A program made the translations under genes and the position numbers. This document shows positions 648 through 31,370 of a stretch of 64,000 bases of DNA, in pieces. Under the pieces are notes generated by a model. That model saw nothing but the letters and a program-made list of their open reading frames with translations, had not been told where the DNA came from and ran no database searches. Positions within the stretch are counted from its first letter, which is position 1. Each line of letters opens with the position of its first letter. The DNA lies in the IMG/VR virus record IMGVR_UViG_3300028569_002417, positions 62,001 to 126,000 of that record, one strand, 5' to 3'.

Positions 648-667
648 AAAATATATAATTTAATTTC

Positions 668-699
668 AAAAACCCTGATCTCTTGGGATTGGGGTTTTT
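668..699 (+). terminator. Rho-independent terminator
   Basis: AAAAACCC-TGATC...GGATT-GGGGTTTTT stem followed by a T-run. Confidence 0.75.
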
Positions 700-765
700 G
701 TTTTTTTTATAAAATATCATTAAAAATTTGAGCTAACAAGTAAATAAAACAAAGGGGCAGAAATT

Positions 766-3639
766 ATGTTGGACTTTAGATCATGGCTTTTATTTACCGA
801 AGCACCATCTGATTACACATGGATTGAAAAAGATCCAGAAGATTACGAAACAGAACTTGCAGCTTATATGCAATCAAAACTTGGTAAATTAGGACAAGGT
901 GAAAGGCCAAGCCCCTACAAAAGAGTTATGGCTGACACCATAAAAGGTGTTATGTCTTCAGGTTCAGGTTCAGCAAAAACTAAAAAGAAGAAAAGAAAAA
1001 AGCCTGAAGGAACACCAGAAGAAAGAGCAGCAGCAAGAGAAATATCAAAAATAAAAAGTAAAGAAATAGCTCGCAATCCTCTTGTGCGATATATTAAAGA
1101 AATTGATGACGTATTCATGACTAAACTTGGACTTTTCAAAATAGAAAATGGCAAGAAAGTATTGGCAGAGAAAAGTCTCGCTGATATGATTATGAAAATT
1201 TGTCGTAAAGCTAAAGCGAATTTATTAAGGCGTGGAAAAGAAGTAGATATAGATGATATTTTTTCTGATACCATTAGCATATTGCACACGGCTCCAAAAG
1301 GAATTCTCAATGATAATAGCACCATCCCCGATAATCAGTTCCTAAAAGTAAAAGCAATGCAAAATTCTGATGGGACTTTGCCAGAAGATAAGTATGAAAA
1401 AGTAATGAGTATGGTTGGTAGCCAAGCAAAAAATTATTCTGGATATGTTGGTTGGGAAATAAGCATGTACGGAACAAGATGGAGAGATAGAAAAAATATA
1501 GAATCGCCAGACGTAATTAAATTCGAGCCAATTGCCACAGATAAAAAAACACAAAGACAAAAAGATATTGAAAGAGATGATCGCTTAGCTCTTAGATCAG
1601 GAATAGTAGGATCTCCAGCCGAGAGAATGTTAAATATTGAAAAAGATTTTCCAGACTTTTCTAAAAAGTTACTTGCCTATTTTAATGGTAAAGATTCAAA
1701 CGAGATGCTTCTTCAAATGGTTCGTAAACTTTTTGATGAAATGAAAAAAGATGCTGGAAACCAAAAGATAGTCAACCAAGATGAATTACAAAAAATTGTT
1801 GACAATGCTGAAATTTTATTCGTTGTCAAAAAAGAAGAAACTGCCGAAAGAGTCAAAGAAATTTCAAGAGTACAGCCAGAAACTTACAAATCTGAACGCC
1901 AAAAAAGATTAACTCGTAACCTTATTGGCACAAGCAGAGAGCCTTATACGAGTGTAAAAATTGGAGGAGAAGAAGAAGACGTATTTGCAGAACCTGATGA
2001 AAAGCTAGAAAAGAATGTTTTAAGTGTTATTGACGATTTAATAAATAATTCAACTGCCGAATTAACCAAGGAAAAGTGGAAAAAAATCAAAAAAGTAGCA
2101 TTTTATGTTCTTGATGCTGACCATAGATGGAACAAAAGTCAAGTTGCTGAGTTTTTAAGAACTAGTCCACCAAATGCCGAAATATATATCAAAGAAATCA
2201 GAAAAATAGCAAAAGAAGTTGCTCTTGATCCTAAAGGTCTTGGACTTAATGAGCCTCAAGAAACTGAAGAAATTATTAAAGGTGGAAAAATTCCACTAAC
2301 TCCTTTCCAAAAATCTCTTGCTGCTGGTAAACCTGATCCAAGTCTTAAAAGATTAGTTAGACACGGTGAAAAAGGTCAAAAACACTATACACTTCCCGGA
2401 GATTTTGCACAAGAAAGAAAAGGAACAACTCCTCAACAAGTGGCAAGGAGAGAAGTAAGTGATCAAGAAAAGAAAATAATGGCAGATGATACTCTTCGTA
2501 AAATAAATAAACTTTACAAACTTGATCAGGAAAGAATAAAAAAAGAACAATTGCCTTTATTCGTTGTTGATCAAAGAGTAAGCAACTATGGTGATGCTTC
2601 AGCAACTACAATTGATCCCGGTGAACAGCATAGATCAAGTGTGGCATCAATAAGATTGTGGAAAGCACAATCTGAATTGTCTTATGCCAAAGCAACACTA
2701 GAATCTTATGAAAATAAACTTAGAGAACTTGAAAAACAAGCTGGAAATTTAGATGTTAAGCTATTGAGTGATTTACGAAATAGCAGAGATGAGATGAAAA
2801 ATCAAGTAGATAAGCTTGAAAAGGAAATAAAAGAACTTAAATCGTTGACAGACAAGGAAGTTTCCGTACTAGGAAACATAAAGCGTTCTGAATTAACAGA
2901 TACAGCAGAAACACCTTTCCTTGTAAAATACGATAATGATCCAGAGGCAAGTCCATATGCTAGCAACAAGGGCATGGCAGGTAAAAAGCCTCTTGGAAGA
3001 TTGAAAGCATTGCGTGATATTTTGAACAAAGCAAATGATCCTCGTTTGGACAGCGAAGAAGTAAAGAAACACTTTAATGCTCCTTTACCTCGTGCTATGC
3101 CCGGAGAAAGGCTTCAAGCTCTTCCAGTTGGTCGTTTTACAAATCAGGGTCGTACCAGCAATGCCTATCTTACTGGCTTAAGACCAAGTCAAATTGGTAT
3201 TGATGCCGAAAAATCCTTTATGAATAAATATGTTACCGGAATGCCGGGAATGCGTCCCGGAAAAAAATATTATCCTCATCCCACAGATGATCCAAAAACA
3301 CGACTTGTTCCAGATCTGGATCATGATGTATTATGGGACACTGATTTCGATGGTTATCCCGAAATTCCCGGCAGCAGGGAATACATGAACTGGCAACAAA
3401 ATAGAAAAAGGCCAGAAGCACCAGAAGCACCAGAAGCACCAGAAGCACCACCAGAAGCACCAGAAGCGCCAGTTGGTGCTAAAAAGCGTGGTCGTCCTAG
3501 ATCAACACCAGAAATAATAGCACCAGTTATAGCACCAACTGGCGCTGCAAAGCGTGGTCGTCCTCGCAAAGTTGAATCAACTGGAAATGGATGGATTTCT
3601 TTGTCTGAGCATATGGCTAGAAGGCGTTTTGCATTCTAG
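766..3639 (+). CDS. Large Lys/Glu-rich protein with capsid-targeting-like N-terminus, HTH-like segment, coiled coil and two C-terminal AT-hooks
   Basis: N-terminus MLDFRSWLLFTEA; KKRGRPR and AKRGRPRK near the C-terminus; upstream GTAAATA. Confidence 0.6.
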   Translation: MLDFRSWLLFTEAPSDYTWIEKDPEDYETELAAYMQSKLGKLGQGERPSPYKRVMADTIKGVMSSGSGSAKTKKKKRKKPEGTPEERAAAREISKIKSKEIARNPLVRYIKEIDDVFMTKLGLFKIENGKKVLAEKSLADMIMKICRKAKANLLRRGKEVDIDDIFSDTISILHTAPKGILNDNSTIPDNQFLKVKAMQNSDGTLPEDKYEKVMSMVGSQAKNYSGYVGWEISMYGTRWRDRKNIESPDVIKFEPIATDKKTQRQKDIERDDRLALRSGIVGSPAERMLNIEKDFPDFSKKLLAYFNGKDSNEMLLQMVRKLFDEMKKDAGNQKIVNQDELQKIVDNAEILFVVKKEETAERVKEISRVQPETYKSERQKRLTRNLIGTSREPYTSVKIGGEEEDVFAEPDEKLEKNVLSVIDDLINNSTAELTKEKWKKIKKVAFYVLDADHRWNKSQVAEFLRTSPPNAEIYIKEIRKIAKEVALDPKGLGLNEPQETEEIIKGGKIPLTPFQKSLAAGKPDPSLKRLVRHGEKGQKHYTLPGDFAQERKGTTPQQVARREVSDQEKKIMADDTLRKINKLYKLDQERIKKEQLPLFVVDQRVSNYGDASATTIDPGEQHRSSVASIRLWKAQSELSYAKATLESYENKLRELEKQAGNLDVKLLSDLRNSRDEMKNQVDKLEKEIKELKSLTDKEVSVLGNIKRSELTDTAETPFLVKYDNDPEASPYASNKGMAGKKPLGRLKALRDILNKANDPRLDSEEVKKHFNAPLPRAMPGERLQALPVGRFTNQGRTSNAYLTGLRPSQIGIDAEKSFMNKYVTGMPGMRPGKKYYPHPTDDPKTRLVPDLDHDVLWDTDFDGYPEIPGSREYMNWQQNRKRPEAPEAPEAPEAPPEAPEAPVGAKKRGRPRSTPEIIAPVIAPTGAAKRGRPRKVESTGNGWISLSEHMARRRFAF
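3412..3471 (+). repeat. 9-nt coding tandem repeat (CCAGAAGCA, Pro-Glu-Ala) x6
   Basis: Read directly from the sequence. Confidence 0.95.
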
Positions 3640-4210: not shown

Positions 4211-4552
4211 ATGAAGTCTTTTTATGAGTTTTATCTTCAGATTCAAAGAGAAGCAGCATTAGCTCCTGCTGCTCCTGCGGCTGGTGCTGCTCCTGCCCCT
4301 GCTGCTGGTGCTGCTCCTGCTGCTGCTGCTGCCCCTGCTGCTGGTGCTGCTCCTGCTGCTCCCGGTGCTGTTGGTACAGCCCCTCCTGCTGCTCCTGTTT
4401 CTAAAGACCCCGCAATTGCCAGTTTAGCAACTGCTATTGCTAAAAACCCAGCGGGATTTAAGGTTTATAAGGATGCATTGGTCAAAGTTACAGATACCAA
4501 ATTGAAGCCAGCAGTAGATTCACTATTAGCTGCTCTCAATATTCCAAAATAA
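4211..4552 (+). CDS. Ala/Pro-rich putative internal head protein
   Basis: GAGGTG SD; N-terminus MKSFYEFYLQIQREA; PAAGAAPA repeats. Confidence 0.65.
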   Translation: MKSFYEFYLQIQREAALAPAAPAAGAAPAPAAGAAPAAAAAPAAGAAPAAPGAVGTAPPAAPVSKDPAIASLATAIAKNPAGFKVYKDALVKVTDTKLKPAVDSLLAALNIPK

Positions 4553-4697
4553 AGCTTTGTCTTTTGAATAGATTTGGTTTATGAATTTTTGGGAAGTACC
4601 AAAGAGGTAATTTAGGTTTTTGAAAAGAAGTCACTGGTTCACCTGCGATATAGGGGATGAATCTTTGACTTCTTTTTTTTATTTTATAATTTTTCAT
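4536..4697 (-). CDS. Small basic hypothetical protein (53 aa)
   Basis: MKNYKIKKRSQRFIPYIAGEPV...ILEY*; its ATG overlaps the upstream stop (ATGA) and it fills the intergenic gap. Confidence 0.45.
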   Translation of the reverse strand: MKNYKIKKRSQRFIPYIAGEPVTSFQKPKLPLWYFPKIHKPNLFKRQSFILEY

Positions 4698-5524
4698 TTT
4701 TCTTTTTTCTTTGGGAAGAAAATTTTCTTTTTCGTTATTTTTCTATATTTTCTATAAGTTTCATCAGCAATACTTTGCAGGAATTGGTGTACGCCTTCTT
4801 TCCCTTTTTTAACATAAATTCTGTTTAGGATTTTATATTTGTCATCAAAGTTATTTCCTTTATTATCATACCAATCATTTTCTGTAAATTTTTTGCAGAA
4901 TGTTTGAATTGAGTCATCTAGAAGTCCTCTTGCGGATTGTTCTCCTGATGTCATTGGTTTAATTTCGTATAGAACTTTACGAGGAACTATGAGTATTTGT
5001 GCGTATGGTTCATTTTTTCTAAAAATATAAGTTTGTCCCGGCATTGGATTTTTGAAAACAACAAAAAATATTTTTGGCCACATGATTGTATTAATGTGAC
5101 CCGGTATTACTAAAGGAACGGTATAAGTTTCATCGGTATAATATCTTGGGTGAGGTTCGATACGAAGAACATATCCATCAGGAACTTCAATATCGAGGCA
5201 TGATGTCATGCCAAAATGTCCGGGTGCGAATGTTGAAAAGGGAGGCATTATGGAATTTGGCAAAATTTTATTTTCTTCTGTGAAGTCACCTATAAATTTT
5301 ACTTCACCATTAATTGTTTTAACATGAAATTCTGTATTAAAAGAATAAAGAAGTTCAAGTCCATAGGTAGATCCTTCAACAAATGGAGTGCAATGCCAAG
5401 GTTGAGGTATATCTCCATCTTTATGATCATTTGGTTCACCAGACCATCCGGGAATCTGCAATCGAATATGTTGAGGAGGCTGGCCCTGATACCAAGACCT
5501 GTATTTCAGCAGTATTTTTTCCAT
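4694..5524 (-). CDS. DUF6065-like / dUTPase-fold protein
   Basis: HCTPFVEG..YGLEL and FRKNEPYAQIL motifs. Start moved to MEKILL because the longer call overlaps the divergent gene. Confidence 0.5.
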   Translation of the reverse strand: MEKILLKYRSWYQGQPPQHIRLQIPGWSGEPNDHKDGDIPQPWHCTPFVEGSTYGLELLYSFNTEFHVKTINGEVKFIGDFTEENKILPNSIMPPFSTFAPGHFGMTSCLDIEVPDGYVLRIEPHPRYYTDETYTVPLVIPGHINTIMWPKIFFVVFKNPMPGQTYIFRKNEPYAQILIVPRKVLYEIKPMTSGEQSARGLLDDSIQTFCKKFTENDWYDNKGNNFDDKYKILNRIYVKKGKEGVHQFLQSIADETYRKYRKITKKKIFFPKKKEK

Positions 5525-5553
5525 AAACAAACCTAGATAGATGAGGAGAAAAA

Positions 5554-6537
5554 ATGAATCCAACTGGAAATCATGGTCAAAGACCTCTTGATCAATGCAA
5601 TGATGTTGGCGGCTCACAAGATCCAATCCTTGATAAAGCGCCTCCATATTGCGAACCTGATCTTAGCAATAATCTGAGAAAAATCAATGACGAAAGTATG
5701 AATTGGCTTAAAGATCAGGCCATGCAAAAGACTGGTTTCGGAGCAAGGGCTGATAGCGACCCGATGCAAAAAGGCAGGATTATCAATGATCCTGATAATC
5801 CTGATCGTACTGTTCTTTATCGTTACTCAAAATCAATTCGTGGTTCTGATGAAGCAATGCTTGATCTTTTCCGCAATGTAATTGTGATTGACGAAGACGG
5901 AAAAGGTTGGCCAATTCCAATTATGCTTGGTCCACCAGAAAAAGCTGTTGCAGCGATGATCCAAGAAAATATTCGTAAAGATGAAACACTTGTTGTGAAT
6001 AGAATTAGATTGCCGATGATGGCTTTAACACAAGGAAGTATTGAATATGATTTAAGCAGATATACTTATCACAAAGCATTGAATTTTTTCCAACAATATG
6101 ATGGATCACCGGGAACGACAATAAGCGAAAAATATAAAAAAGATACTGTTTTGGGATTTGCAAAAGGTATTCCGGTTAATATTGGATATGCTTTAACTGC
6201 TTGGACAATGTACAGAGAAGACATGAACCAAATAGTAGAGCAAATAATTACAAAATTTAGTCAAGTTGCATACATACGAGTGACTGGTGTACCGTGGGAG
6301 GTAATAGTTAAATTAGATTCAATTGCGAACAACCTGAATAATGAGCCGGGTGATCAGCAAATTAGAGTTATAAAATACGAATTTAATATGACCGTACAGA
6401 CATATATACCTCAGCCAATTGAACGTAAGAAATCTGTTCTAAAAATGAAAGTTGACTTTGTTGACGGAATTACAGATCAGGAAATTACAGAGGTTTTAGG
6501 CAGAATTGAAAAGACAGTAAAGGAATTGGAATGTTAG
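5554..6537 (+). CDS. Tail terminator / sheath stabiliser, T4 gp15-like
   Basis: LPMMAL...IEYD..R and IPVNIGY.L......DMNQIVEQI motifs; upstream of the sheath gene. Confidence 0.8.
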   Translation: MNPTGNHGQRPLDQCNDVGGSQDPILDKAPPYCEPDLSNNLRKINDESMNWLKDQAMQKTGFGARADSDPMQKGRIINDPDNPDRTVLYRYSKSIRGSDEAMLDLFRNVIVIDEDGKGWPIPIMLGPPEKAVAAMIQENIRKDETLVVNRIRLPMMALTQGSIEYDLSRYTYHKALNFFQQYDGSPGTTISEKYKKDTVLGFAKGIPVNIGYALTAWTMYREDMNQIVEQIITKFSQVAYIRVTGVPWEVIVKLDSIANNLNNEPGDQQIRVIKYEFNMTVQTYIPQPIERKKSVLKMKVDFVDGITDQEITEVLGRIEKTVKELEC

Positions 6538-6756: not shown

Positions 6757-9120
6757 ATGGCGATTCTTAAAGGTTTTCCACCATCTAATACAATCAGCCC
6801 AAGTGTTAGAATTGCTGAAAAAGACTTGAGCTTCATCGCACCTGAACAGTCAACGCATACGGCAGGATTGGTTGGATTTGCCTCTAAAGGCCCAGTCAAT
6901 CTTCCTATTGCGATTGCTACTTCACGTCAGTTGCATACAACTTTTGGCAATCCTCATCCTGATATGGGTGATCCATTCTTGATTTATGCAGCAGATCAAT
7001 ATCTCCTCGTCGCAAATACACTTTATGTAGTGCGTGTTGCAGATACCGATCCTGTTTCTGATGAGCAGGCTACAACCGCTTCAGTAGATGTTCTGGCAGC
7101 TGGATCAATTATTGAAATTGAAGCTAACGGCGAAGCCGGTCCTTACACTTTTGACGAAGATTCATTCTTCCGTTGGAAACTTAATGGTCAGCTTTCAACA
7201 AAAACACTAGTTGTTCTTGCAGATACATATACAACTGATGAACTTGTCATAGCTTTGAATGATCAGCTTGATACTATTCTTGACGGTATTGAGTTTTACG
7301 CAAATACCTCTGATGAAATTGGTGTAAAAACCGTTTGGGCCTATGGACCTAGCGCCAGCCTTGAACTGGTTTCAATTCAGAATGCAATTTACGGTGGTTC
7401 TGTAAACGATACAGATAACATTCGTGACAACCCAACTGGTTTGGGTACAGGCATGACCCGTGCTTCAGTAACAGGTTCTAATGATCGTTGGCCAATCAAT
7501 GGCTATCAGGTTTCTGGCCATTATGAATTCACAGGTCTTACCGATCAGGTAATTGAGCTTGTGGTCGATGGCACTGATAATATTTTGATTGATCAAGTTG
7601 TTCAGACAATTACAATCGCTGATGGCGCTGCTTACACAAGCATCAACGATGTTATCTCTGATATTAATGATCAGAAGGCTGAAAACGGCGGAACTCTTCC
7701 CGGTGGCTGGACAGCACTAGCCTCTGGAACACAGCTTCGCTTCGTTACTAATCATCATGGCGCTGATGCTCGTCTTCGCATCAAGCCAGCTAGCACTGAA
7801 GTTTTTGGACTTTCAACTCTTACCGTAACTGGTACAAGTCCTGAAGGTACAACTGGCTCAGTCAGCATCGAAACTTTTGGTTTGGTTAACGGTGGTGCAA
7901 ATAGCGGTGGCGATGTTTCCTTTGTTATAAACGCTGATTCACCGGGCATTGATGGTAACGTAACTCAAGTTCTTATCACTAATAGCTCTGTTGATTCAAC
8001 TTTTAACTTGGAAGTTTATGCAAATGGAGTTCAAGTTGAATCTTGGGGCAATCTGACAAAGAATGCAACAAGCCGATTCTATGTTGAAACCTATTTGGCT
8101 CTGGTATCTGATTATGTCAGACCTATAGACAACACCTTAGTTGGCGCTGGTCCTGCTAGTGGCACTTACAATCTTGCAGGCGGCTCTGACGGTATCCCCG
8201 CAGATCCTGACAAGCAAGACGTGCTTCTAATGGGCAGTCCTATTGGCTACACAGGCATTTATACTCTCAGCGAACCTGAGCAAGTAAATATTGACCTGAT
8301 TGCAGTTCCCGGTCACTCAAGCACAGCAGTTGTTCAAGAACTTCTACTGTTCTGTCGTGACTATCGTCAAGATTGTCTTGCAATCATCGACGCTCCTTTC
8401 GGTTTGACTGTTAAGGAAGTTGTTGCTTGGCAGAACGGTGCTCATCCGCTTAACAATACTCGATTTGATAGCGATTTTGGCGCACTTTACTGGCCTTGGG
8501 TTAAAATCTATGATCCATACAACAAAGTTGATGTATGGTGTCCTCCAAGCGGTTCAATCATGGCAGTTATCGCTCGTAGCGATTTTCTGGGAGCTCCTTG
8601 GTTTGCTCCAGCTGGACTTACTCGTGGTGTTGTTCCTAACATTACAGATGTCTATAGTCGTCCTACTTTGGAAGAACGTGATACGATGTACGGCAATCGC
8701 AACTGCGTAAATCCAATCATACAGTTCGCTGATGTTCAAGGTTTCGTGGTATTCGGCCAGAAAACCTTGCAGCGCACTCCTACTGCTCTTGACCGTGTTA
8801 ATGTTCGCCGTCTGATGTTTTATATCGAGAAGGCTATTCGCACCGCAAGTCGCACCTTGTTGTTCGATCCAAATGATGGAATTTTCCAGCAGAAGTTTAT
8901 AACTATCGCAGAAAATATTCTTAGTCAGGTTCAAGTTGGTCGTGGGTTGACTGCTTATATTATCAAAGCCGATGCCGAACTCAATACTGTTGATGTTATC
9001 GACCGTAATGAATTCCGTGCAAGAATTGGTGTGCAACCAACCCGTGCTGCTGAATTTATGTTCATCGAATTCTCGATTCACAGAACTGGCAGCTTTGTAG
9101 TAGGCGCTGAAACATTCTAA
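6757..9120 (+). CDS. Contractile tail sheath protein (gp18-like)
   Basis: SPSV.I.EKD, ALYWPW, PPSG, PWFAPAG, NPI, GQKT, DRVNVRRL, QPTRAAEF motifs. Confidence 0.97.
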   Translation: MAILKGFPPSNTISPSVRIAEKDLSFIAPEQSTHTAGLVGFASKGPVNLPIAIATSRQLHTTFGNPHPDMGDPFLIYAADQYLLVANTLYVVRVADTDPVSDEQATTASVDVLAAGSIIEIEANGEAGPYTFDEDSFFRWKLNGQLSTKTLVVLADTYTTDELVIALNDQLDTILDGIEFYANTSDEIGVKTVWAYGPSASLELVSIQNAIYGGSVNDTDNIRDNPTGLGTGMTRASVTGSNDRWPINGYQVSGHYEFTGLTDQVIELVVDGTDNILIDQVVQTITIADGAAYTSINDVISDINDQKAENGGTLPGGWTALASGTQLRFVTNHHGADARLRIKPASTEVFGLSTLTVTGTSPEGTTGSVSIETFGLVNGGANSGGDVSFVINADSPGIDGNVTQVLITNSSVDSTFNLEVYANGVQVESWGNLTKNATSRFYVETYLALVSDYVRPIDNTLVGAGPASGTYNLAGGSDGIPADPDKQDVLLMGSPIGYTGIYTLSEPEQVNIDLIAVPGHSSTAVVQELLLFCRDYRQDCLAIIDAPFGLTVKEVVAWQNGAHPLNNTRFDSDFGALYWPWVKIYDPYNKVDVWCPPSGSIMAVIARSDFLGAPWFAPAGLTRGVVPNITDVYSRPTLEERDTMYGNRNCVNPIIQFADVQGFVVFGQKTLQRTPTALDRVNVRRLMFYIEKAIRTASRTLLFDPNDGIFQQKFITIAENILSQVQVGRGLTAYIIKADAELNTVDVIDRNEFRARIGVQPTRAAEFMFIEFSIHRTGSFVVGAETF

Positions 9121-9151
9121 AAATTAAAGGAAGTTAAAAAAGGAGAATAAG

Positions 9152-9742
9152 ATGGCAGACATAACAAACATGGGATTAGGATCAATTGGCGGGAACAGTA
9201 TTGTTTTCAAAAGAAAGTACCGATGGACTTTCGCTGTGCGCTGGAATGGAGGAGACATTCCTACCGCATTCGTAAAAGTTGCAAACCGTCCCAATCTTAC
9301 AATTGAACAGACTGAAATTAACTATCTGCATGGTAAGATGTGGATTCCCGGTAAAGGTACTTGGGAAACACTAACTGTAAGCTACTACGATATTGGCGGT
9401 GATGATGCCAAAGGTATGAAAACCTTATGGGATTGGCTTGTTACAGTTTATAACTTCACCGATCCAGATACTCTGAAGCAGACATCAAAAAGAGGAGCTG
9501 ACGGCAACAGCACAGGTTGGGCCGCAGTTGGCAATCTTACCATGTATGATGGTACTGGTGCAGAAATGGAAAACTGGAGACTTAAGAATCTTTGGCCAGC
9601 TGCCATTAACTTCGGCGACCTTGATTACGGTTCTTCAGAAGTAGCGACACTAGATCTTACAATGAGATTTAGTGAGGCCAAATGGACTCCAAGTTGCGGT
9701 GTTCTACCACCTACTGCGACTCCAATCGGTTGCAACGGCTAA
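9152..9742 (+). CDS. Tail tube protein (gp19-like), probably major
   Basis: RP.LTIE......PGK.TWE.LTV.YYD, W.L...WP..INFGDLDY; follows the sheath gene. Confidence 0.9.
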   Translation: MADITNMGLGSIGGNSIVFKRKYRWTFAVRWNGGDIPTAFVKVANRPNLTIEQTEINYLHGKMWIPGKGTWETLTVSYYDIGGDDAKGMKTLWDWLVTVYNFTDPDTLKQTSKRGADGNSTGWAAVGNLTMYDGTGAEMENWRLKNLWPAAINFGDLDYGSSEVATLDLTMRFSEAKWTPSCGVLPPTATPIGCNG

Positions 9743-9811: not shown

Positions 9812-10321
9812 ATGGGTCAGCAAATGGGATGGGGTGATAGTTTTGGTTTAGCAGATTCTAATGCTTGCTTCAAAAGAAAAAATCGTTGGCTTTTTATGAT
9901 TCCAGACATAAGTGCAGAAGGAATCAATGCCTTACCTCCATCGAAAGCATCTAGACCTTCTCTTTCATTCAAAGAACTAAGCGTGGAACATTTGAATGAA
10001 ACAATTTATTATCCGGGAAAACCAGAATGGAAATCAATTACATTAACTCTATATGACATTTATAAGCCTCAAAACAAAATTTGGGAATGGATCAATTCAT
10101 ATTATGATGTAGAAAACGATAAATTCAAATTTGCTGTTGGATTTAAGCAACCAAGAGCGCAACTAACTTTATATGATGGAACAGGCGAAGAGATTGAAAC
10201 TTGGTTCCTTGAGTCTGTTTGGTGCCAAGACATTTCATTTGGAGACTTGGACATGGGAAGCAGTGAAGTTGTAACTGTTGATCTTATTTTAAGATATGAC
10301 AGAGCCACCTATCTATCTTAA
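9812..10321 (+). CDS. Second tail tube paralogue
   Basis: Same motifs as the first tube gene (FKRK.RW.F, PGK.EW..IT.T.YD, FGDLD.GSSEV). Confidence 0.88.
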   Translation: MGQQMGWGDSFGLADSNACFKRKNRWLFMIPDISAEGINALPPSKASRPSLSFKELSVEHLNETIYYPGKPEWKSITLTLYDIYKPQNKIWEWINSYYDVENDKFKFAVGFKQPRAQLTLYDGTGEEIETWFLESVWCQDISFGDLDMGSSEVVTVDLILRYDRATYLS

Positions 10322-10706: not shown

Positions 10707-11252
10707 TCAAAGATCACTAACAATATTGTGTCTTTTATAAAGATTTTTGCTTTTAGTTGCAGGAAGTTTTTGATCGAATTGAATTTGTATGAAATCAAGA
10801 TATTTTCTTTTCAGTTCATTATAGTTTCTTGCGGTTCGATATAATTGACGAAAATGGTTAAGTATACATGTTGTCATATAGTTAAAAGCTTTGCCTTTAT
10901 CTGGGTCGAAACGATCAATTTTTTCAAAGCATATCATAACCCCTTCTTGAACTGCATCATCTTGATCAATTAGATTAAATTTTGCATATCTCACAATATT
11001 TTCTGAAAGTGTATAAAAAGCAATGGCAAGTTGTCCTTGCACTTCTTCATATTCTGAGGAAATAATCTTAAATTCTTTTTCGGTTAAAATCCAAGAATCT
11101 GGTTTTTGAAAATTTCCTCTTTTCATGGTTCGATGTTGAGTTTCATTGATATCGTCCATAAAGAGTTGATATTTAATTCTTTCCTTTTTAGATTTCTGAA
11201 AATGTACGATCAAGGACTCAAAGGTTTTATTATTCAAATATTCAGTGGCCAT
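10707..11252 (-). CDS. Late sigma factor, T4 gp55-like
   Basis: YLNNK, DAVQEG...CF..IDRFDP.K.KAFNY.T motif; region 2 only. Confidence 0.85.
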   Translation of the reverse strand: MATEYLNNKTFESLIVHFQKSKKERIKYQLFMDDINETQHRTMKRGNFQKPDSWILTEKEFKIISSEYEEVQGQLAIAFYTLSENIVRYAKFNLIDQDDAVQEGVMICFEKIDRFDPDKGKAFNYMTTCILNHFRQLYRTARNYNELKRKYLDFIQIQFDQKLPATKSKNLYKRHNIVSDL

Positions 11253-11489: not shown

Positions 11490-12399
11490 TTCTTTGCTTT
11501 CGTCAATTGAAGAAATCAACTGTGATTTAATTGTTGGCGATCTTGGATCTTCAGATGGCACTGTGGAAAAGCTTATATCGCATAATGCAAAAATAATTAA
11601 ATATAGTTTTGGAGATGATTTTTCATTAATTAGAAATCAAATGATTGCACAGACGAAAAATCAGTGGATATTGTTTATTGAACCCTATGAAACTATTATG
11701 GCAGGATTAGACTCAATAAAAATAGCCGTTTCTGGACCTCCTGCTTCTTATAATATAGGCGTAATGCAAGGAGATATGCTTACAAGACAGACTAGGCTTT
11801 GGCATAATTCATTACAACTTAAATTCACAAATCCAGTTTTTGAAACAATTGAAGGTAAATCAAATTTCTTAAATGCATTTATTATTGTGTCAGATCACAA
11901 ATCAGAATTTGACATGATAGATATTGCTAAAAAATGGCACAATAAAAGCCCTTTATCGCCTGACCCAATTTATTACATGGCTTGTAATGAATTATTTGCC
12001 AAAAATTGGGATTCTTTTATAAATTATGCCGATTTATATTTGCACCAACAAAAAAAGCAAACCATGTCTTATTATATGACAAATTATTACTTAGCAATGG
12101 TTTATTGTTATATAAAAAAAGATTATCAAAATGCTTTGAAAAGCATATACATGTGTGTCATCAGGAATCCAACTATGGCTGAATTTTGGTGCCTTCTTGC
12201 TGATATTTTTTATGCCATGAAATTTTATGATAAAGCTTATCATTTTTACAGTAATGCAAAAATACTTGGATCACGCCGCTTACAAGAATGTGATTGGCCT
12301 ATGGAGATTTCCAAGTATCAAGATTATCCAGAAAAAATGATGAATTCTTGTCTTAAAATTTTAGAACAAACAAAAATTTATTTTAGTGAATCAGAATAG
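11434..12399 (+). CDS. GT2-like glycosyltransferase domain + TPR
   Basis: ILTKN, GDLGSSDGT, DFS..RN, followed by TPR helices; DxD position reads IEPYE. Confidence 0.75.
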   Translation: MKSPLAIHILTKNNSQTIDSLLSSIEEINCDLIVGDLGSSDGTVEKLISHNAKIIKYSFGDDFSLIRNQMIAQTKNQWILFIEPYETIMAGLDSIKIAVSGPPASYNIGVMQGDMLTRQTRLWHNSLQLKFTNPVFETIEGKSNFLNAFIIVSDHKSEFDMIDIAKKWHNKSPLSPDPIYYMACNELFAKNWDSFINYADLYLHQQKKQTMSYYMTNYYLAMVYCYIKKDYQNALKSIYMCVIRNPTMAEFWCLLADIFYAMKFYDKAYHFYSNAKILGSRRLQECDWPMEISKYQDYPEKMMNSCLKILEQTKIYFSESE

Positions 12400-15890: not shown

Positions 15891-17531
15891 ATGAGCGTTT
15901 CATCAGCCAAGATTGATTTTTGGATCAACAACAACTACAACATCATGTTTGTTGGTCGTCACGGTGTTGGCAAAACAGCAATTATCAAAGAAGCATTTGA
16001 TCGACACCAACTTAAATGGCGTTATTTCTCTGCATCAACTATGGACCCATGGGTCGATTTCATTGGTGTTCCCCGTGAAAAGACAGAAGATGTCATGCCA
16101 GAGAGCTTCTTGACCATCCGTGAATTAGCCAAAATTAATCAGCAAATTGCAATTTCTTATGTGATGCAAAACTGGAAACTTGACGCTGATTCAGCAAATG
16201 AAGTTGTTCAACACGCATCTAAACCTGCTAGCACAACATATCTTGAATTGATTAGACCATTCAGCTTTGCCACAGGAGAAGTGGAAGCTTTATTTTTCGA
16301 TGAGTTCAACAGAAGCCCCAAAAAGATTAGAAACGCTGTAATGGAATTGATTCAATTCGGCAGCGTAAATGGTCACAAGTTTCCCAACCTTCGTTTCGTT
16401 TGGTGTGCAATTAATCCAGATGACGACGAACTACTGAAATATGATGTAGAAGTTTGTGATCCTGCACACCTTGATCGCTTTCATTGCTCCATTCCTATCC
16501 CCTATAAACCCAACGCAGAGTGGTTCCGTGAGAAATATGGTCAGAGATTTGCTGACTCAGCAATTCAGTGGTGGGATGATCTTAACGAAGAAGTGAAAAA
16601 CACTGTAAGTCCCAGAAGGCTTCAATACGCACTTGATATGTTTTCCAAAAAAGGTGACATTCGTGATGTATTGCCCACTGCCAGTAATGTAGGCAAGCTT
16701 ATTACATCTCTTAAAAACGGACCAATCACCGAACAAATTGAAGAACTAGTCAAAAACAAAGATCAAAGTGCTGCCTCTAAGTTTCTTGAAAATGAAAATA
16801 ATTTTTCAGCATCAATTAAGTTTATTGTGCAATCAGCAACTCTTCTTGAATATTTTGTTCCCTTGATGCCTCAAGAAAAGATTGCAAGTCTCATGGCAAC
16901 AGACGATAAAATATGCAATCATATTATCAAAAATATTGATAAAATTCCATCTTTTCATAAGATAAGCAAGCAAGTTATGAATGCCAATTTTGATGCTAGC
17001 TTAGTGAAAAAGATTCGTAGAGCTTTGACTGAAGATGAGAACTTAGCCAAAGCTTTTGCACAAGACGTTCTTGTAGTTCCAAAAAAATCTATCGCTCCTC
17101 ATTTCAACAAGCGTAAGATTAATTGGGACGCAGAGCTAATTCAATTGAATTCTATGGCTATCGATAGCGGCCCTCAAAGAATTGCCATTTACGAAAAAAT
17201 TGTAAAATCTATTCCAGAAAAAATAACAGCAGAAGAATCTTTGGCTACACTAAAACTTCTGAACGAAATATTTGGCAATACAGATAATGCTTCTGCAAAC
17301 AATCAAAAAGATAAATGGCTTTTTACATCAATCATGCTTGACCCAAGCTTTGATAAGCTTTTTGGAATCATTAATCATTGTCTCATTCAAATTCACAAAG
17401 AGAAGAATCTGACACTTACTGAAATTATGAATAATTACGATATGAAATCTTATGAAATTTTCAAAAAAATTGTTCAAACTGACATGAATTGGAAGATTCC
17501 TTCTGATGACTTTTCAGGAATTGCCAAATGA
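15891..17531 (+). CDS. MoxR-like AAA+ ATPase
   Basis: Walker A GRHGVGKT, Walker B LFFDEFNR, AINP, DPAHLDRF, SPR. Confidence 0.9.
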   Translation: MSVSSAKIDFWINNNYNIMFVGRHGVGKTAIIKEAFDRHQLKWRYFSASTMDPWVDFIGVPREKTEDVMPESFLTIRELAKINQQIAISYVMQNWKLDADSANEVVQHASKPASTTYLELIRPFSFATGEVEALFFDEFNRSPKKIRNAVMELIQFGSVNGHKFPNLRFVWCAINPDDDELLKYDVEVCDPAHLDRFHCSIPIPYKPNAEWFREKYGQRFADSAIQWWDDLNEEVKNTVSPRRLQYALDMFSKKGDIRDVLPTASNVGKLITSLKNGPITEQIEELVKNKDQSAASKFLENENNFSASIKFIVQSATLLEYFVPLMPQEKIASLMATDDKICNHIIKNIDKIPSFHKISKQVMNANFDASLVKKIRRALTEDENLAKAFAQDVLVVPKKSIAPHFNKRKINWDAELIQLNSMAIDSGPQRIAIYEKIVKSIPEKITAEESLATLKLLNEIFGNTDNASANNQKDKWLFTSIMLDPSFDKLFGIINHCLIQIHKEKNLTLTEIMNNYDMKSYEIFKKIVQTDMNWKIPSDDFSGIAK

Positions 17532-18850
17532 TTTCCTCGAAATATAAAATTGGAAATGAAGAGTGGCTTGAAATATCAAACTCTCTTGAGCCACACCATG
17601 CCGTCTTTTATAAAGTCTGGCAAATGGGTCGTCCTGTATTTGACGAATCAATTGACACTGCATGTGTTCAATTTGATCAAGAAGGGAAATTTATTCTCTT
17701 TAGGTTTAATCCAAAGTTTTGGAGCAGCCTAGATTTATACAATAAGCTTTTCGTTATATGTCACGAGGCTCTTCATATTGTTTTGAATCATGGCATTAGA
17801 GCAAAGGAAGCAGACTGCAATAGGCAAGCCACCAATGTTGCTATGGACATTGTGGTAAACCATACACTAACGAAAAATTTTGGTTTCTCTCGTGATAAAA
17901 TAACTGGCTCAGAAGATTATTGTTGGGTCGATACTGTTTTCAAAGATCGCAATCCTATGCCATCAAGCAACGAAATGTTTGAATTCTATTATAATCTTTT
18001 TGAAAAAGTCTATGGTCACGGTGGAATGGGAGATGGTGAAGGAGGAGGGCCTCAAACTGTTGATGATCATGAATCACTTGGATCTCAATCCGTTAATTGG
18101 GACAAAGTAATTGACCAGTTAAATGAAGGTCTTTCAGACGAAGAAAAGGAAGGACTTAAATCAACAATTAGCAAGCATTTTCAGAAAAAGAAACCACAAG
18201 ATGGCCAATCTAAAGAATCAGATAAAAATACACCAGCAGGTTCAGGTTCTGGAGGAATTTGGGTTTTTGCCGACTCTAAAAAAGCAAAGAAGCTTAAGAA
18301 ATGGGAAACTATCATTAAGCGTTGGGCCTTAAAGTTCTTCAAAGATGAGAACAAAGAATTTGAACAATGGGCAAGAATAAACAGACGCATGACCATGCTT
18401 CCAAGAAATATGATCATACCATCAGAAATGGAAATAGATGATCGCACTTACGATGAACATAAAATCAATGTTTGGTTCTTTTTAGATACATCAGGATCAT
18501 GCTGGAATCTAAAAGATAGGTTTTTTGCTGCTGCTGAATCTTTACCAGAAACAAGATTCAATGTAAGACTATTTTGCTTTGATACCAATGTGCAAGAAAC
18601 CAACTTAAAAGAAAGAAAGATATATGGAGGTGGAGGCACTTCTTTCAGCATCATTGAACAATATATTCAAAGAACTATGCAAAATGAAGATATTAAATAT
18701 CCTAACTCTGTTTGGATTTTAACAGATGGTTATGGAAATCAAGTGAAACCATTACATCCTGAAAAATGGCATTGGTTTTTAACAGAAGGTGGAGTTAAGA
18801 ATTACATTGATGAAAAATCAAATGTCTTTAGTCTTAAAGATTTTGAATAA
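17528..18850 (+). CDS. Metallopeptidase-VWA protein (DUF2201-like)
   Basis: HEALH, N.A.D..VN, MIDAS DTSGS, GGGT, LTDG. Confidence 0.9.
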   Translation: MISSKYKIGNEEWLEISNSLEPHHAVFYKVWQMGRPVFDESIDTACVQFDQEGKFILFRFNPKFWSSLDLYNKLFVICHEALHIVLNHGIRAKEADCNRQATNVAMDIVVNHTLTKNFGFSRDKITGSEDYCWVDTVFKDRNPMPSSNEMFEFYYNLFEKVYGHGGMGDGEGGGPQTVDDHESLGSQSVNWDKVIDQLNEGLSDEEKEGLKSTISKHFQKKKPQDGQSKESDKNTPAGSGSGGIWVFADSKKAKKLKKWETIIKRWALKFFKDENKEFEQWARINRRMTMLPRNMIIPSEMEIDDRTYDEHKINVWFFLDTSGSCWNLKDRFFAAAESLPETRFNVRLFCFDTNVQETNLKERKIYGGGGTSFSIIEQYIQRTMQNEDIKYPNSVWILTDGYGNQVKPLHPEKWHWFLTEGGVKNYIDEKSNVFSLKDFE

Positions 18851-20589: not shown

Positions 20590-21177
20590 TTACATCGCAT
20601 CTAATTGGCCTGTGCTTCCACCAAGCGGAGGTGCTGCCATGTCTTGACCTGTTCCTCCTACTGGAGGAGTTCCATCAGGAGCGGCATCCATTGTTTCAGG
20701 AGCAGGAGGAGCGCCTGCTGCCGCTGGAGGAGGAGCAGGCGCAGCAGCTGGTGGCTGTGCTGGTACATTCTCAGTTGGCGATGTTGCTTTTGTTCCTTGA
20801 TTTTGATTTTTAGGACTTTCAGTTGGAGTTAGTTTGTTGATTGGAACACCCATATCGCCAACTAATTTTTCCAACAAACCAGCTGCTCCAGAAATAGCAT
20901 TTGGCAAGTCACTTTTCTCATCAATCGATTTCATTAAGGCCACACCAGCCTTTTGCAAAATAAGCAAATTAGGCTGTTCATCTTTTGGCCAACTACTATG
21001 CAAAACACGACGAATCAAAACAACAATACGCATGGCGTATTGAGTCAGATCTCTTGTTCCCATATTAGGAGCATCTTCCCGCAATTCTTGAAGTGCCGAA
21101 AGAATATCACCAACTTTTTGTGCCAAATAGACACTTGCTTCATTCAAAAGGAATGATTTGAATCCAAATTTCATCAT
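20590..21177 (-). CDS. Putative internal head protein with Pro/Ala-rich tail
   Basis: N-terminus MKFGFKSFLLNEA; ATAGATA 4 nt before the ATG. Confidence 0.65.
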   Translation of the reverse strand: MMKFGFKSFLLNEASVYLAQKVGDILSALQELREDAPNMGTRDLTQYAMRIVVLIRRVLHSSWPKDEQPNLLILQKAGVALMKSIDEKSDLPNAISGAAGLLEKLVGDMGVPINKLTPTESPKNQNQGTKATSPTENVPAQPPAAAPAPPPAAAGAPPAPETMDAAPDGTPPVGGTGQDMAAPPLGGSTGQLDAM

Positions 21178-22814: not shown

Positions 22815-22882
22815 TACAATCACCTCTGCCTCTAAAAGAGTAGAAACAGCCTAACAAAGACCAATAAAATTAACAAGTCTAA

Positions 22883-23515
22883 CTATTTCTTGGCGTAAAT
22901 CATGTAACAGCAAGTTTCTAAATGCAATTTCTCAAGAATACATTCATAACCTAATCTGGCAAATTTATCAACCATCCCAATGGCAAATTCACATTCTTTT
23001 GTTTTATCACAAAATAAACCACAAGTATGAACCTCTATCGCCCATTGCCTAACCATCTTAATGTTTTCATCAGACTCATTCAAAACAAACGCAAATTCAA
23101 ATCCTTCAATGTCTAATTTAAGGAAATCAATTTTTGATAATTTGAATTTTTCTATGATGTATTTTAGATCAATTGTTTCTATAAAGCCATTTTGACCAGT
23201 AACTTTTACATCTCTGTGGCAAACAAATGCATTTACAGGTGTAATTTTTTTATATTTTTTACAATTTTCTTTCAAATATTGATAAGTTTCCTTGTTTGAC
23301 TCAAATGAAATAATTTTTTTTGCCTTTTTTTCAAGAGCAAGCAAGGAGAATAATCCAATGCTGGCACCCAGATCTAAAACAACATCGCCTTCTTTTATTT
23401 CAAGTCCATGCCTGAAATATTCTTTATCTTCCCAAATTTCCCTATAATATTTTTCATAATTTAATTTTATATCATCGTTCCAATTTTGATTGATTTGAAA
23501 ATTTGAAAATTGCAT
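22883..23515 (-). CDS. FkbM-family methyltransferase
   Basis: VLDLGASIG, IDFLKLDIEG.E, IEVH. Confidence 0.88.
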   Translation of the reverse strand: MQFSNFQINQNWNDDIKLNYEKYYREIWEDKEYFRHGLEIKEGDVVLDLGASIGLFSLLALEKKAKKIISFESNKETYQYLKENCKKYKKITPVNAFVCHRDVKVTGQNGFIETIDLKYIIEKFKLSKIDFLKLDIEGFEFAFVLNESDENIKMVRQWAIEVHTCGLFCDKTKECEFAIGMVDKFARLGYECILEKLHLETCCYMIYAKK

Positions 23516-30782: not shown

Positions 30783-31370
30783 ATGATGTCTTTTAGTCAA
30801 TTTATTGAAATTAGAGAAGGATTTGGCCCTTATATAGGACCATGTGTTGATACTGATAATTATCAGGTTCAAGGAGCTTGCAGTCAACTTAATTCTGATT
30901 CTAAAAATGCGAAGATTAGCAAAGGCGAATATAAGCATAAGAAAAAGAAAAAGCATCGTTTGAAAAACGAAGAAGCATTAGCAAATCCCAAGACTGCTGT
31001 TACTGGAGCAAGTTCTCCGCTTCTCGTATCTGCTCCTGTGGCAGATAGAGAAAAATGGAGTGCTAGCAAGAAAGATATCTTGAATTTTTGGAAAACGCTT
31101 GAGGCCAACAAGCCAATTACAACAAGTCCAATTAAATATGGTTTCAAGGGATCAACATATAGCGAAGATGGAATCCGTATAACAGGAAGTCCTGCTTATA
31201 TAACAAGTGTAATAAGTCATCTAAAAGACTTCTTAGCTTATGAGAACCCACAAAGCAAGCTAGCTGTTTCATATCGTGAAACACAATCTCCAAGCAAGAT
31301 TGCCACTGGACAAAGCAAGACAAGTTATGTATTTTACATTGCCGTCAAGGACAGAGGCGATAAAAACTAA
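30783..31370 (+). CDS. Putative internal head protein
   Basis: MMSFSQFIEIREG; ATAAATA 4 nt before the ATG. Confidence 0.7.
   Translation: MMSFSQFIEIREGFGPYIGPCVDTDNYQVQGACSQLNSDSKNAKISKGEYKHKKKKKHRLKNEEALANPKTAVTGASSPLLVSAPVADREKWSASKKDILNFWKTLEANKPITTSPIKYGFKGSTYSEDGIRITGSPAYITSVISHLKDFLAYENPQSKLAVSYRETQSPSKIATGQSKTSYVFYIAVKDRGDKN

What the first reader, a model, noticed from the sequence alone, without database searches (positions are those of the whole stretch)
766..3639. Possible virion-packaged sigma-like/AT-hook DNA-binding protein
Seen: targeting-like N-terminus; a segment reminiscent of ECF sigma region 2 (LADMIMKICRK...DIDDIFSDT, ~1177-1287); a region-4-like HTH (VAFYVL...NKSQVAEFLRTS...IYIKEIRK, ~2089-2215); a coiled coil; a PEA linker; and two AT-hooks (3481-3501, 3547-3570). 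Known: GRPR hooks bind AT-rich minor grooves and are rare in prokaryotes. Inference: an ejected transcription or counter-silencing factor for the AT-rich genome. The sigma resemblance is weak.
Basis: inference. Interest (0 to 1): 0.6.

Follow-up and report, generated by a model that had tools for sequence, protein, structure and literature searches.

The report
Fast-evolving capsid-tagged DNA-binding phage protein
This 957-residue gene of a giant T4-like phage probably makes a protein that is packed into the capsid, travels with the DNA into the host and evolves unusually fast; it carries DNA-binding motifs and a part that weakly resembles a bacterial sigma factor.

Summary
The ORF (766-3639, 957 aa) lies in the neck/tail module of a 225 kb T4-like viral contig. 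It belongs to a tiny orphan family with no PHROG or phage-genome match.

- **Capsid tag.** The N-terminus MLDFRSWLLFTE|A fits the T4 capsid targeting sequence (MKTYQEFIAE). At least 12 ORFs of the contig start the same way.
- **Hypervariable island.** Against two related phages the flanking genes are 94-100% identical with omega 0-0.2. This gene has omega about 0.9-1.0, and only its first ~30 and last 22 residues are conserved. That is how T4 internal proteins behave.

My best reading is a capsid-packaged, ejected, AT-hook/HTH DNA-binding protein in an arms race with the host. The sigma-like role stays unproven, and the rapid evolution argues against a canonical sigma factor. The C-terminal half is unexplained.

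The parts
667..700 (+). Terminator-like hairpin (15 pairs) followed by a T-run. It separates the gene from the upstream 147-aa ORF.
   Evidence: sequence
740..757 (+). GTAAATAA (740-747), one copy of an NTAAATAA motif enriched upstream of ORFs in this contig and similar to the T4 late-promoter consensus recalled from memory. The AAAGGGG ribosome-binding site follows at 751-757.
   Evidence: promoter function not tested
766..3639 (+). The ORF: 957 aa, 108.7 kDa, pI 9.3, net charge +24.
766..849 (+). Conserved N-terminus (aa 1-28). Aa 1-12, MLDFRSWLLFTE followed by Ala, is the capsid-targeting-like tag with a putative prohead-protease site after Glu12.
   Evidence: 90-93% identity here while the following segment drops to 49% against L004
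970..1008 (+). Lysine/arginine run (aa 69-81, AKTKKKKRKKPEG) in a predicted disordered stretch.
1075..1479 (+). Domain 1 (aa 104-238): helices plus a conserved beta-hairpin (LGLFKIENGKKVLA).
1627..1869 (+). Domain 2 (aa 288-368): a generic four-helix bundle.
2002..2229 (+). Domain 3 (aa 413-488): four helices with a helix-turn-helix, sigma region 4-like.
2620..2853 (+). Predicted antiparallel coiled-coil hairpin (aa 619-696).
   Evidence: pLDDT 64-83; sub-threshold coiled-coil Pfam hits
2854..3411 (+). Pro/Gly-rich region (aa 697-882). It is predicted disordered, has no family and no assigned function.
3412..3468 (+). PEA(P) repeat linker (aa 883-901). Other alleles carry VAP repeats or other sequence here.
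3481..3501 (+). AT hook 1 (KKRGRPR, aa 906-912). K906, R908 and G909 are invariant in the family.
3547..3570 (+). AT hook 2 (AKRGRPRK, aa 928-935). It is a duplication found in only some alleles.
3571..3636 (+). Conserved C-terminal peptide (aa 936-957, VESTGNGWISLSEHMARRRFAF). dN is 0 in the two pairs scored for this segment, apart from a Tyr inserted before GNGW in some alleles. Its role is unknown.
4211..4552 (+). Neighbouring 113-aa Ala/Pro-rich ORF with the same kind of N-terminal tag (MKSFYEFYLQIQRE|A). It forms a second hypervariable island and is listed as a companion, not as part of the gene.
   Evidence: (only the first 14 aa conserved against L004)

Best explanation
The gene most likely encodes a large, basic internal head protein of a giant T4-like myovirus.

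**Proposed mechanism (all steps inferred).**
1. The first about 12 residues act as a T4-type capsid targeting sequence and bring the protein into the prohead core.
2. The prohead protease probably removes the tag after Glu12.
3. The mature protein of about 107 kDa stays with the packaged AT-rich DNA. Its lysine run, one or two AT hooks and a helix-turn-helix domain would hold it there.
4. The protein is a string of small helical domains joined by long disordered linkers, so it could thread through the tail with the DNA.
5. Inside the host it meets host factors, and this drives rapid diversification of everything except the two termini.
6. Its N-terminal half (aa 104-488) may imitate a sigma factor and touch RNA polymerase and/or DNA.

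**What is shown.** The motifs, the genome-wide N-terminal tag, the hypervariable island and the predicted folds.

**What is inferred.** Packaging, cleavage, ejection, DNA binding and any action on transcription.
For: **Context.**
- The gene sits in the neck/tail module: gp13-like upstream, then gp15, sheath and two tube genes downstream.
- It has its own terminator-bounded transcription unit.

**Capsid tag.**
- The N-terminus fits the T4 tag MKTYQEFIAE (PMC8442874).
- The same motif starts 7 of 255 called ORFs, against 0.19 expected, and is almost absent at internal Met residues.
- In an unrelated family of 76 clusters, all 15 members I aligned start the same way, for example MKSFRDFIAEQE.

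**Evolution.**
- Against L018 the directly flanking genes differ by 0-1 substitutions, while this gene has about 263 non-synonymous and 78 synonymous changes. Omega is 0.87, and Fisher p is 5e-18 against the pooled flanks.
- Omega is about 1.0 against L004 and 0.95 between L004 and L016. Neighbouring genes have omega 0-0.2.
- The DNA mismatch island runs from about 800 to 3600, the ORF minus its ends. A second island covers the neighbouring tagged ORF at 4211-4552.
- This matches T4 internal proteins, described as highly diverse with only the targeting sequence conserved (PMC3012670).
- The ORF stays open in all alleles.

**Composition and DNA-binding motifs.**
- The protein is basic, pI 9.3.
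- AT_hook passes Pfam's cut-off, and K906, R908 and G909 of hook 1 are invariant.

**Fold.**
- Domain 3 matches sigma region 4 / HTH domains over their full length.
- Sigma factors dominate the Foldseek lists for two models.
- Alignments are colinear with sigma70 95-612, Thermus sigmaA 78-423 and sigma32 12-284.
- Protein-language-model neighbours include Sigma70_r4, HTH and ECF clusters at 0.85-0.87.
- Docking of domain 1 on beta' clamp helices scores 0.47 against a best control of 0.01. The mark was reached by 58 of 80 solved complexes and 2 of 110 mismatched pairs. Passes at 0.60 or under were only 7 of those 80 solved complexes and both mismatches, so the verdict is weak support. The runs agree in at least 53% of contacts, and the partner's pLDDT is at least 73.
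Against: **Packaging.**
- There is no direct evidence of packaging: no proteome, and no prohead protease, capsid or portal gene found in this 225 kb contig. CheckV rates it 52% complete, and the Pfam control genomes were silent, so these absences are uninformative.
- The tag ends in F-T-E rather than the T4 consensus L/I-x-E, which I recall from memory.
- External virion proteins can also be hypervariable.

**Sigma likeness.**
- The viral structure library gave a mixed list, and the Atlas shape search was uninformative.
- No sigma Pfam family matches at E <= 10.
- A profile-profile comparison with the phage's own gp55-like sigma found nothing.
- Domain 2 is a generic four-helix bundle, not a clear sigma-3.
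- Omega near 1 across domains 1-3 is hard to reconcile with a sigma factor that must fit a conserved polymerase and fixed promoters.

**Model quality.**
- The alignments behind the models are shallow (11-12 sequences). Whole-protein pLDDT is 44.8.
- Aa 500-957 has no predicted fold or family.
Confidence: 0.5

Rival explanations
1. It is a cytoplasmic, non-packaged, phage-encoded sigma-like or HTH transcription regulator. It would redirect host RNA polymerase or bind phage DNA during infection and merely happens to sit in the structural module.
For: - Sigma-like structural leads.
- Weak docking support on beta'.
- HTH and AT hooks.
- Its own transcription unit.
- Jumbo phages without their own polymerase often encode sigma homologues (PMC13282480), and no phage polymerase was detected here.
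Against: - The N-terminal tag shared with many ORFs has no role in this reading.
- Omega near 1 contrasts with omega 0.04 for the phage's real gp55-like sigma.
- No sigma family matches by sequence.
- The 470-residue C-terminal extension is unexplained.
Confidence: 0.15
2. It is an external neck or collar fibre, analogous to T4 fibritin. The conserved N-terminus would anchor it to the gp13/gp14 neck, the conserved C-terminal peptide would drive oligomerisation, and the variable middle would be exposed to the environment.
For: - Position between gp13-like and gp15; in T4, wac lies next to gene 13 (from memory).
- Conserved ends with a variable middle.
- A coiled-coil segment.
- The C-terminus PEAP...GNGWISLS loosely recalls the fibritin foldon (from memory, untested).
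Against: - Pfam Fibritin_C is not matched at E <= 10.
- Only about 70 residues are predicted coiled coil, and as an antiparallel hairpin.
- The Lys/Glu/Arg-rich composition, AT hooks and compact helical HTH domain are unlike fibre proteins.
- The N-terminus belongs to the genome-wide tag family, not to a neck-binding domain.
Confidence: 0.12
3. It is a packaged 'filler' or scaffold-like core protein. It would act only as a DNA counter-ion or core component in the head, with constraints on composition and length but not on sequence, and with no role after ejection.
For: - Omega about 1 along nearly the whole length, with the ORF kept open.
- Basic, low-complexity and disordered stretches.
- The tag-like N-terminus.
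Against: - Three confidently predicted folded domains contain many invariant core positions.
- Some segments show a non-synonymous excess: 10:0, 20:2 and 14:0, pooled binomial p 0.002, though chosen post hoc.
- The HTH domain also occurs in a separate 219-aa ORF (P0017), although its 718-bp contig gives no context.
- dS is raised 10-100 fold over the flanks. That points to old, maintained alleles rather than plain drift.
Confidence: 0.15

Closest known systems
[quoted passage not shown]
   Same: - A short N-terminal tag of the MKTYQEFIAE type ending in Glu.
- A basic protein.
- The tag is conserved while the body is hypervariable between close phages.
- Encoded by a T4-like myovirus.
   Different: - About 957 aa, whereas the T4 internal proteins are small as I recall them; only Alt comes close in size (sizes from memory).
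- Multi-domain, with HTH, AT hooks and a coiled coil.
- No sequence similarity to any T4 protein.
- Packaging and cleavage are not shown here.
Sigma-70 family factors, and sigma-like subunits known only from structure (phiKZ gp68, AR9 gp226)
   Same: - A colinear series of helical domains whose first and last resemble sigma-2 and sigma-4 in predicted structure.
- Weak predicted docking on beta' clamp helices.
- phiKZ gp68 resembles sigma factors in structure, and AR9 gp226 has no sequence similarity to sigma yet is essential for transcription initiation (PMC13282480).
   Different: - No Pfam sigma match.
- The middle domain is a generic four-helix bundle.
- A 470-residue C-terminal extension.
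- Omega about 1, against 0.04 for the phage's gp55-like sigma.
AT-hook (HMGA-type) and RGR-type minor-groove binders such as Lsr2 and H-NS
   Same: A GRP/RGR core flanked by Lys/Arg and preceded by a proline-rich linker. The genome is AT-rich, 31-44% GC.
   Different: Here the motif sits near the C-terminus of a phage protein. Binding was not tested. The comparison with Lsr2 and H-NS rests on my own knowledge, not on a tool result.
T4 fibritin (wac)
   Same: A gene neighbourhood near gp13. Conserved termini, a variable middle and some coiled coil.
   Different: No Fibritin_C match. The composition and predicted domains are unlike a trimeric fibre.

Membership tests
T4-type capsid-targeted internal (ejected) head proteins | N-terminal tag of about 10 residues resembling MKTYQEFIAE and ending hydrophobic-x-Glu | tested here: met
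   MLDFRSWLLFTE|A. The motif is enriched at ORF starts: 7 of 255 against 0.19 in shuffles, 11 of 420 near-start Met against 1 of 967 internal. The T4 sequence comes from PMC8442874.
T4-type capsid-targeted internal (ejected) head proteins | Tag conserved while the body is highly diverse between related phages | tested here: met
   Aa 1-30 are 90-93% identical. The body has omega 0.87-1.0 and indels, while flanking genes are 94-100% identical.
T4-type capsid-targeted internal (ejected) head proteins | Cleavage by a gp21-type prohead protease, and presence of that protease in the genome | tested here: inconclusive
   PF03420 was not found in the 225 kb contig. The contig is about 52% complete and the control genomes were silent. 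Cleavage itself cannot be tested here.
T4-type capsid-targeted internal (ejected) head proteins | Physical presence inside the capsid and ejection into the host | not testable with these tools
   This needs virion proteomics or labelling.
Sigma-70 family | Sequence match to Sigma70_r2, Sigma70_r4 or Sigma70_ECF profiles | tested here: not met
   No such family matches at E <= 1 for aa 100-520 and 380-500, or at E <= 10 for aa 100-245 and 405-495. Only the gp55-like gene matches PF04542 in the contig. hhalign against that gene gave probability 0.06.
Sigma-70 family | Sigma-4 fold (four helices with an HTH) | tested here: inconclusive
Sigma-70 family | Sigma-2 fold and binding to beta' clamp helices | tested here: inconclusive
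Sigma-70 family | Promoter-specific initiation with RNA polymerase core | not testable with these tools
   This needs in vitro transcription.
AT-hook proteins (PF02178) | GRP core flanked by basic residues, scoring over Pfam's cut-off | tested here: met
   17.5 bits for the whole protein and 18.1 bits with two stretches for aa 870-957, against a cut-off of 17.4. K906, R908 and G909 are invariant.
AT-hook proteins (PF02178) | Binding to the minor groove of AT-rich DNA | not testable with these tools
   This needs EMSA or footprinting.
Fibritin (wac) neck whiskers | C-terminal foldon (Fibritin_C) and a long segmented trimeric coiled coil | tested here: not met
   No Fibritin_C hit at E <= 10. 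Only aa 619-696 is predicted coiled coil, as a hairpin.

The most novel reading that the evidence does not exclude
A virion-delivered sigma-factor mimic. The capsid-tagged protein would be ejected with the genome. Through sigma-2- and sigma-4-like domains it would engage host RNA polymerase core and, through its HTH and AT hooks, the incoming AT-rich DNA. Early transcription would then be started or redirected before any phage gene is expressed. Its surface would diversify in an arms race with host sensors or competitors.
Probability: 0.2. Interest if true: 0.85.

Novelty: new variant of a known kind. Interest (0 to 1): 0.62.

Why it matters
- **Scale of packaged proteins.** If the tag reading holds, this giant T4-like phage carries a dozen or more capsid-targeted proteins. 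That is far more than the handful known in T4. This 108 kDa member would be the first with recognisable DNA-binding and sigma-like modules.
- **A way to find ejected proteins.** A conserved tag plus a hypervariable body, read from metagenomes alone, could locate ejected proteins. These are where phage counter-defence and host-takeover functions concentrate.
- **A new kind of delivery.** In the papers I searched I found no sigma-like protein delivered by a virion. The known virion-delivered transcription tools are whole polymerases (N4, phiKZ) or modifying enzymes (T4 Alt).
- **A testable case of local diversification.** The sharp hypervariable island, with omega about 1 and dS 10-100 times that of the flanks, sits between near-identical genes and can be studied with more alleles.

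Tried and rejected
**Searches that found nothing**
- PHROGs, with no hit.
- tblastn against 50,697 phage records, with no match.
- PDB profile searches with A1 and A2, which gave only noise.
- The word search, which found only 12 close relatives.
- The exhaustive search of 1.84 billion representatives, which gave 5 hits. Only P0017 added anything, and it lies on a 718-bp contig without context.
- IMG/VR, which holds one relative on a 36.7 kb contig.
- The Atlas shape search and the Atlas feature search of aa 500-957, both uninformative.
- The BFVD fold search, which gave a mixed list with a few phage sigma factors.

**Ideas I rejected or dropped**
- The 964-aa upstream ORF is not a paralogue.
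- Clamp-binding C-terminal tail, as in T4 gp55, gp33 and gp43 (from memory): dropped, because no gp45 was found in the contig and the idea could not be tested.
- Terminase small subunit or tape measure: no TerL nearby, and the composition and domain pattern do not fit.
- Diversity-generating retroelement: the variable region spans 2.8 kb with indels, unlike a short variable repeat. I did not test this further.
- Canonical T4 late promoter TATAAATA: not enriched (5 found, 4.5 expected). The related NTAAATAA motif is enriched, but often ends 4 nt before the ATG, so its meaning is unclear.

- The genome search 'relatives' is not available for a virus record, so I could not build a sigma-family profile for hhalign.

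Full report
**1. What is there**

The window is bases 62001-126000 of a 225.5 kb IMG/VR viral contig that CheckV rates 52% complete. The ORF at 766-3639 is intact and encodes 957 aa. It has a ribosome-binding site, and a strong terminator-like hairpin lies upstream at 667-700, so it is probably its own transcription unit. Pfam supports only the AT hooks, at 17.5-18.1 bits against a cut-off of 17.4. PHROGs and a tblastn search of 50,697 phage genomes find nothing.

**2. Context**

The gene lies in a T4-like neck and tail module.
- Upstream, on the minus strand, is a gp13-like neck gene. It is followed by a 964-aa orphan and three small ORFs.
- Downstream are a 180-aa ORF, a 113-aa Ala/Pro-rich ORF, gp15, the sheath, two tube paralogues and a gp55-like late sigma.
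- The order is the same in related metagenomic contigs.
- Pfam models did not detect capsid, portal, prohead protease, terminase, sliding clamp or phage RNA polymerase genes in this contig. Most of these absences are uninformative, because the contig is about half a genome and several control searches were silent.

**3. Family**

The word search of 5.8 billion proteins gave 12 relatives at 55-100% identity. The exhaustive profile search of 1.84 billion representatives gave 5 hits. The only distant one, P0017 (219 aa, E 1e-4), covers just the HTH region. It sits on a 718-bp contig, so it gives no context. This is an orphan family restricted to one phage lineage.

**4. The N-terminus is a capsid-targeting-like tag**

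MLDFRSWLLFTE|A resembles the T4 capsid targeting sequence MKTYQEFIAE. That tag is cleaved off the internal proteins and is enough to encapsidate foreign proteins (PMC8442874; PMC3012670). A pattern built from it shows the following.
- It starts 7 of 255 called ORFs in this contig, against a shuffle mean of 0.19 and a maximum of 2.
- It matches 11 of 420 Met residues near a start, against 1 of 967 internal Met residues.
- A looser pattern adds further examples such as MKTFFEFYQQMKEE and MKSFYEFYLQIQRE|A.
- One tagged ORF (window 30783-31370) belongs to a family of 76 clusters. All 15 members I aligned begin this way, for example MKSFRDFIAEQE, followed by a linker of very variable length and a conserved domain of about 100 aa.

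The tag is therefore a real, conserved N-terminal signal in this phage group. That it directs packaging is an inference from T4.

**5. The gene is a hypervariable island**

| Comparison | Flanking genes | This gene |
|---|---|---|
| Window vs L018 | 147-aa and 180-aa neighbours differ by 0-1 substitutions; gp15, sheath, tube 2 and gp55-like have dS 0.01-0.05; flank omega is 0-0.1 | about 263 non-synonymous and 78 synonymous changes; dN 0.13, dS 0.149, omega 0.87 |
| Window vs L004 | omega 0.04-0.2 | omega about 1 in almost every segment |
| L004 vs L016 | not compared | omega 0.95 |

- The contrast with the pooled flanks against L018 has Fisher p 5e-18.
- A mismatch profile in 200-nt bins shows the island runs from about 800 to 3600. 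That is the ORF minus its first about 30 and last 22 codons. dN is 0 for those last 22 codons in both pairs where the segment was scored.
- A second island covers exactly the neighbouring tagged ORF at 4211-4552.
- Some segments show a non-synonymous excess: aa 288-368 at 10:0, aa 413-488 at 20:2, and clade-2 residues 61-200 at 14:0. The pooled binomial p is 0.002, but I chose these segments post hoc.
- dS inside the gene is 10-100 times that of the flanks. I read this as old alleles kept by diversifying selection and shuffled by recombination. Local hypermutation is not excluded.
- The ORF stays open in every allele, so it is not decaying.

T4 internal proteins are described in the same terms: a highly diverse set with only the targeting sequence conserved.

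**6. Fold**

The whole-protein AlphaFold model is poor, with pLDDT 44.8. A model of aa 84-500 reaches pLDDT 65.4 and shows three confident helical domains joined by disordered linkers: aa 104-238, 288-368 and 413-488.

- **Domain 2.** It matches only generic four-helix bundles.
- **Foldseek.** For both models it ranks sigmaA, sigma70, ECF and sigma28 chains first, but at E 0.05-1.
- **Protein-language-model neighbours.** They include Sigma70_r4, HTH and ECF clusters at 0.85-0.87, below the 0.9 level that the tool treats as more than a lead.
- **Docking of domain 1 on E. coli beta' 220-340.** The score is 0.47 against a best control of 0.01.
  - The pass mark was reached by 58 of 80 solved complexes and 2 of 110 mismatched pairs.
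  - Passes at 0.60 or under were only 7 of those 80 solved complexes and both mismatches, so the verdict is weak support.
  - The runs agree in at least 53% of contacts, and the partner's pLDDT is at least 73. Such a pass may reflect likeness to solved sigma-beta' complexes rather than binding.

Set against these leads:
- no Pfam sigma family matches at E <= 10;
- PDB sequence profiles find nothing;
- hhalign against the phage's own gp55-like sigma is empty;
- the viral and Atlas structure libraries are uninformative.

In short, an HTH of the sigma-4 type is moderately supported. A full sigma-like architecture is a consistent but sub-significant signal.

**7. C-terminal half**

- Aa 500-957 has a predicted coiled-coil hairpin at aa 619-696. 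The rest is a Pro/Gly-rich stretch predicted disordered, then a PEA repeat, the AT hooks, and the conserved C-terminal peptide GNGWISLSEHMARRRFAF.
- No family or feature lead was found.
- The high identity seen in the alignment reflects low divergence (dS about 0.1) rather than strong purifying selection, because omega is 0.8-1.15 there against L004. The function of this half is unexplained.

**8. Interpretation**

The best-supported reading is a capsid-targeted, basic (pI 9.3), DNA-binding internal protein that is ejected with the genome and is engaged in an arms race with the host. I put this at about 0.5. Small helical domains on long flexible linkers suit passage through the tail, which is an inference.

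The sigma-like reading is possible, but the evolutionary rate weakens it: the phage's genuine gp55-like sigma has omega 0.04. If the N-terminal half touches RNA polymerase, a decoy, modulator or sensor-evading role fits better than a classic promoter-specificity subunit.

The rivals are:
- a cytoplasmic regulator (0.15);
- a fibritin-like neck fibre (0.12);
- a sequence-tolerant packaged filler (0.15).

**9. Novelty**

Capsid-targeted ejected proteins are known from T4. A 108 kDa member with HTH, AT hooks and sigma-like domains is a new variant of that kind, and so is a repertoire of a dozen or more tagged ORFs in one phage. Literature searches found no virion-delivered sigma-like protein. phiKZ gp68 is described as structurally homologous to sigma factors, and AR9 gp226 has no sequence similarity to sigma yet is essential for transcription initiation.

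**10. Limits**

- I could not build a sigma profile for hhalign.
- The alignments are shallow.
- Statements about T4 gene order, the protease consensus, clamp-binding tails, the foldon sequence, and Lsr2 and H-NS rest on my own knowledge and are marked as such.

Noticed in passing
G000 genome coordinates 2403-3176(-), 11494-12291(+), 22250-23116(-), 26538-27071(-), 44858-46105(-), 174868-175275(+), 177745-179004(-), 179562-179750(+), 197990-198607(-), 215291-215689(+), 223990-224469(-); window 4211-4552(+), 20590-21174(-), 30783-31370(+): A dozen or more ORFs of the contig begin with a T4 capsid-targeting-like N-terminus (M-x-x-F-x-x-[FWY]...hydrophobic-x-E). This suggests a large repertoire of packaged proteins. 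Ten of them (eight at the genome coordinates, plus window 20590-21174 and 30783-31370) were scanned in PHROGs, and two matched only families of unknown function.
   Followed up: partly
window 4211-4552 (+): A 113-aa Ala/Pro-rich ORF carries the tag MKSFYEFYLQIQRE|A. It forms a second hypervariable island: only its first 14 aa are conserved against L004, while the 180-aa gene between it and the finding is 100% identical.
   Followed up: partly
window 30783-31370 (+); alignment A5: This tagged ORF belongs to a family of 76 protein clusters, on contigs of up to 691 kb. All 15 members I aligned start with the tag, for example MKSFRDFIAEQE. A linker of very variable length follows, then a conserved domain of about 100 aa with the motif GSTYGEDGIRITGS. 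Its function is unknown.
   Followed up: partly
window 10707-11252 (-): A genuine gp55-like late sigma: phrog_234, and Pfam Sigma70_r2 at 32.9 bits. It is under strong purifying selection, with omega 0.04 against L004.
   Followed up: yes
window 9152-9742 and 9812-10321 (+): Two tandem tail-tube (gp19-like) paralogues. The first diverges much faster between relatives (dS 0.25-0.74) and lies in a milder variable stretch at 8801-9700.
   Followed up: partly
whole contig; for example window 740-747, and genome 2403-3176 and 11494-12291 at -11: An NTAAATAA motif is enriched upstream of ORFs (39 of 255 within 100 nt; the top 8-mer, CTAAATAA, is enriched 9-fold). It often ends only 4 nt before the ATG, and it precedes several tagged genes. 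I do not know whether it is a late-promoter-like element or a translation signal.
   Followed up: partly
G000 58395-61289 (+) = L002:12395-15286: A 964-aa orphan ORF lies between the gp13-like gene and the finding. It has no PHROG or Pfam family and is not a paralogue of the finding.
   Followed up: partly
window 40410-60426 (+): A run of very large ORFs (1557, 844, 726, 744 and 1982 aa). Three of the four scanned (1557, 844 and 744 aa) share repeated tail-fibre-like domains (phrog_13518, phrog_892); the 726-aa ORF had no match, and the 1982-aa ORF was not scanned.
   Followed up: no
whole contig G000: The contig is 225.5 kb, and CheckV estimates 52% completeness. A relative of the finding lies on a 315 kb contig, so this is probably a T4-like phage well above 300 kb. 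Pfam found no capsid, portal or terminase genes in the part held.
   Followed up: partly
window 17528-18850 (+); L002:10430-11533 (-): HNH-endonuclease-like ORFs lie inside or next to the structural module.
   Followed up: no
window 4694-5647 (-) and 5554-6537 (+): The listed ORFs overlap by about 90 nt. Related contigs call the minus-strand gene at 276 aa, starting at Met42 of the listed ORF, and the gp15 Pfam match begins at residue 89. Both starts are therefore probably further in.
   Followed up: no
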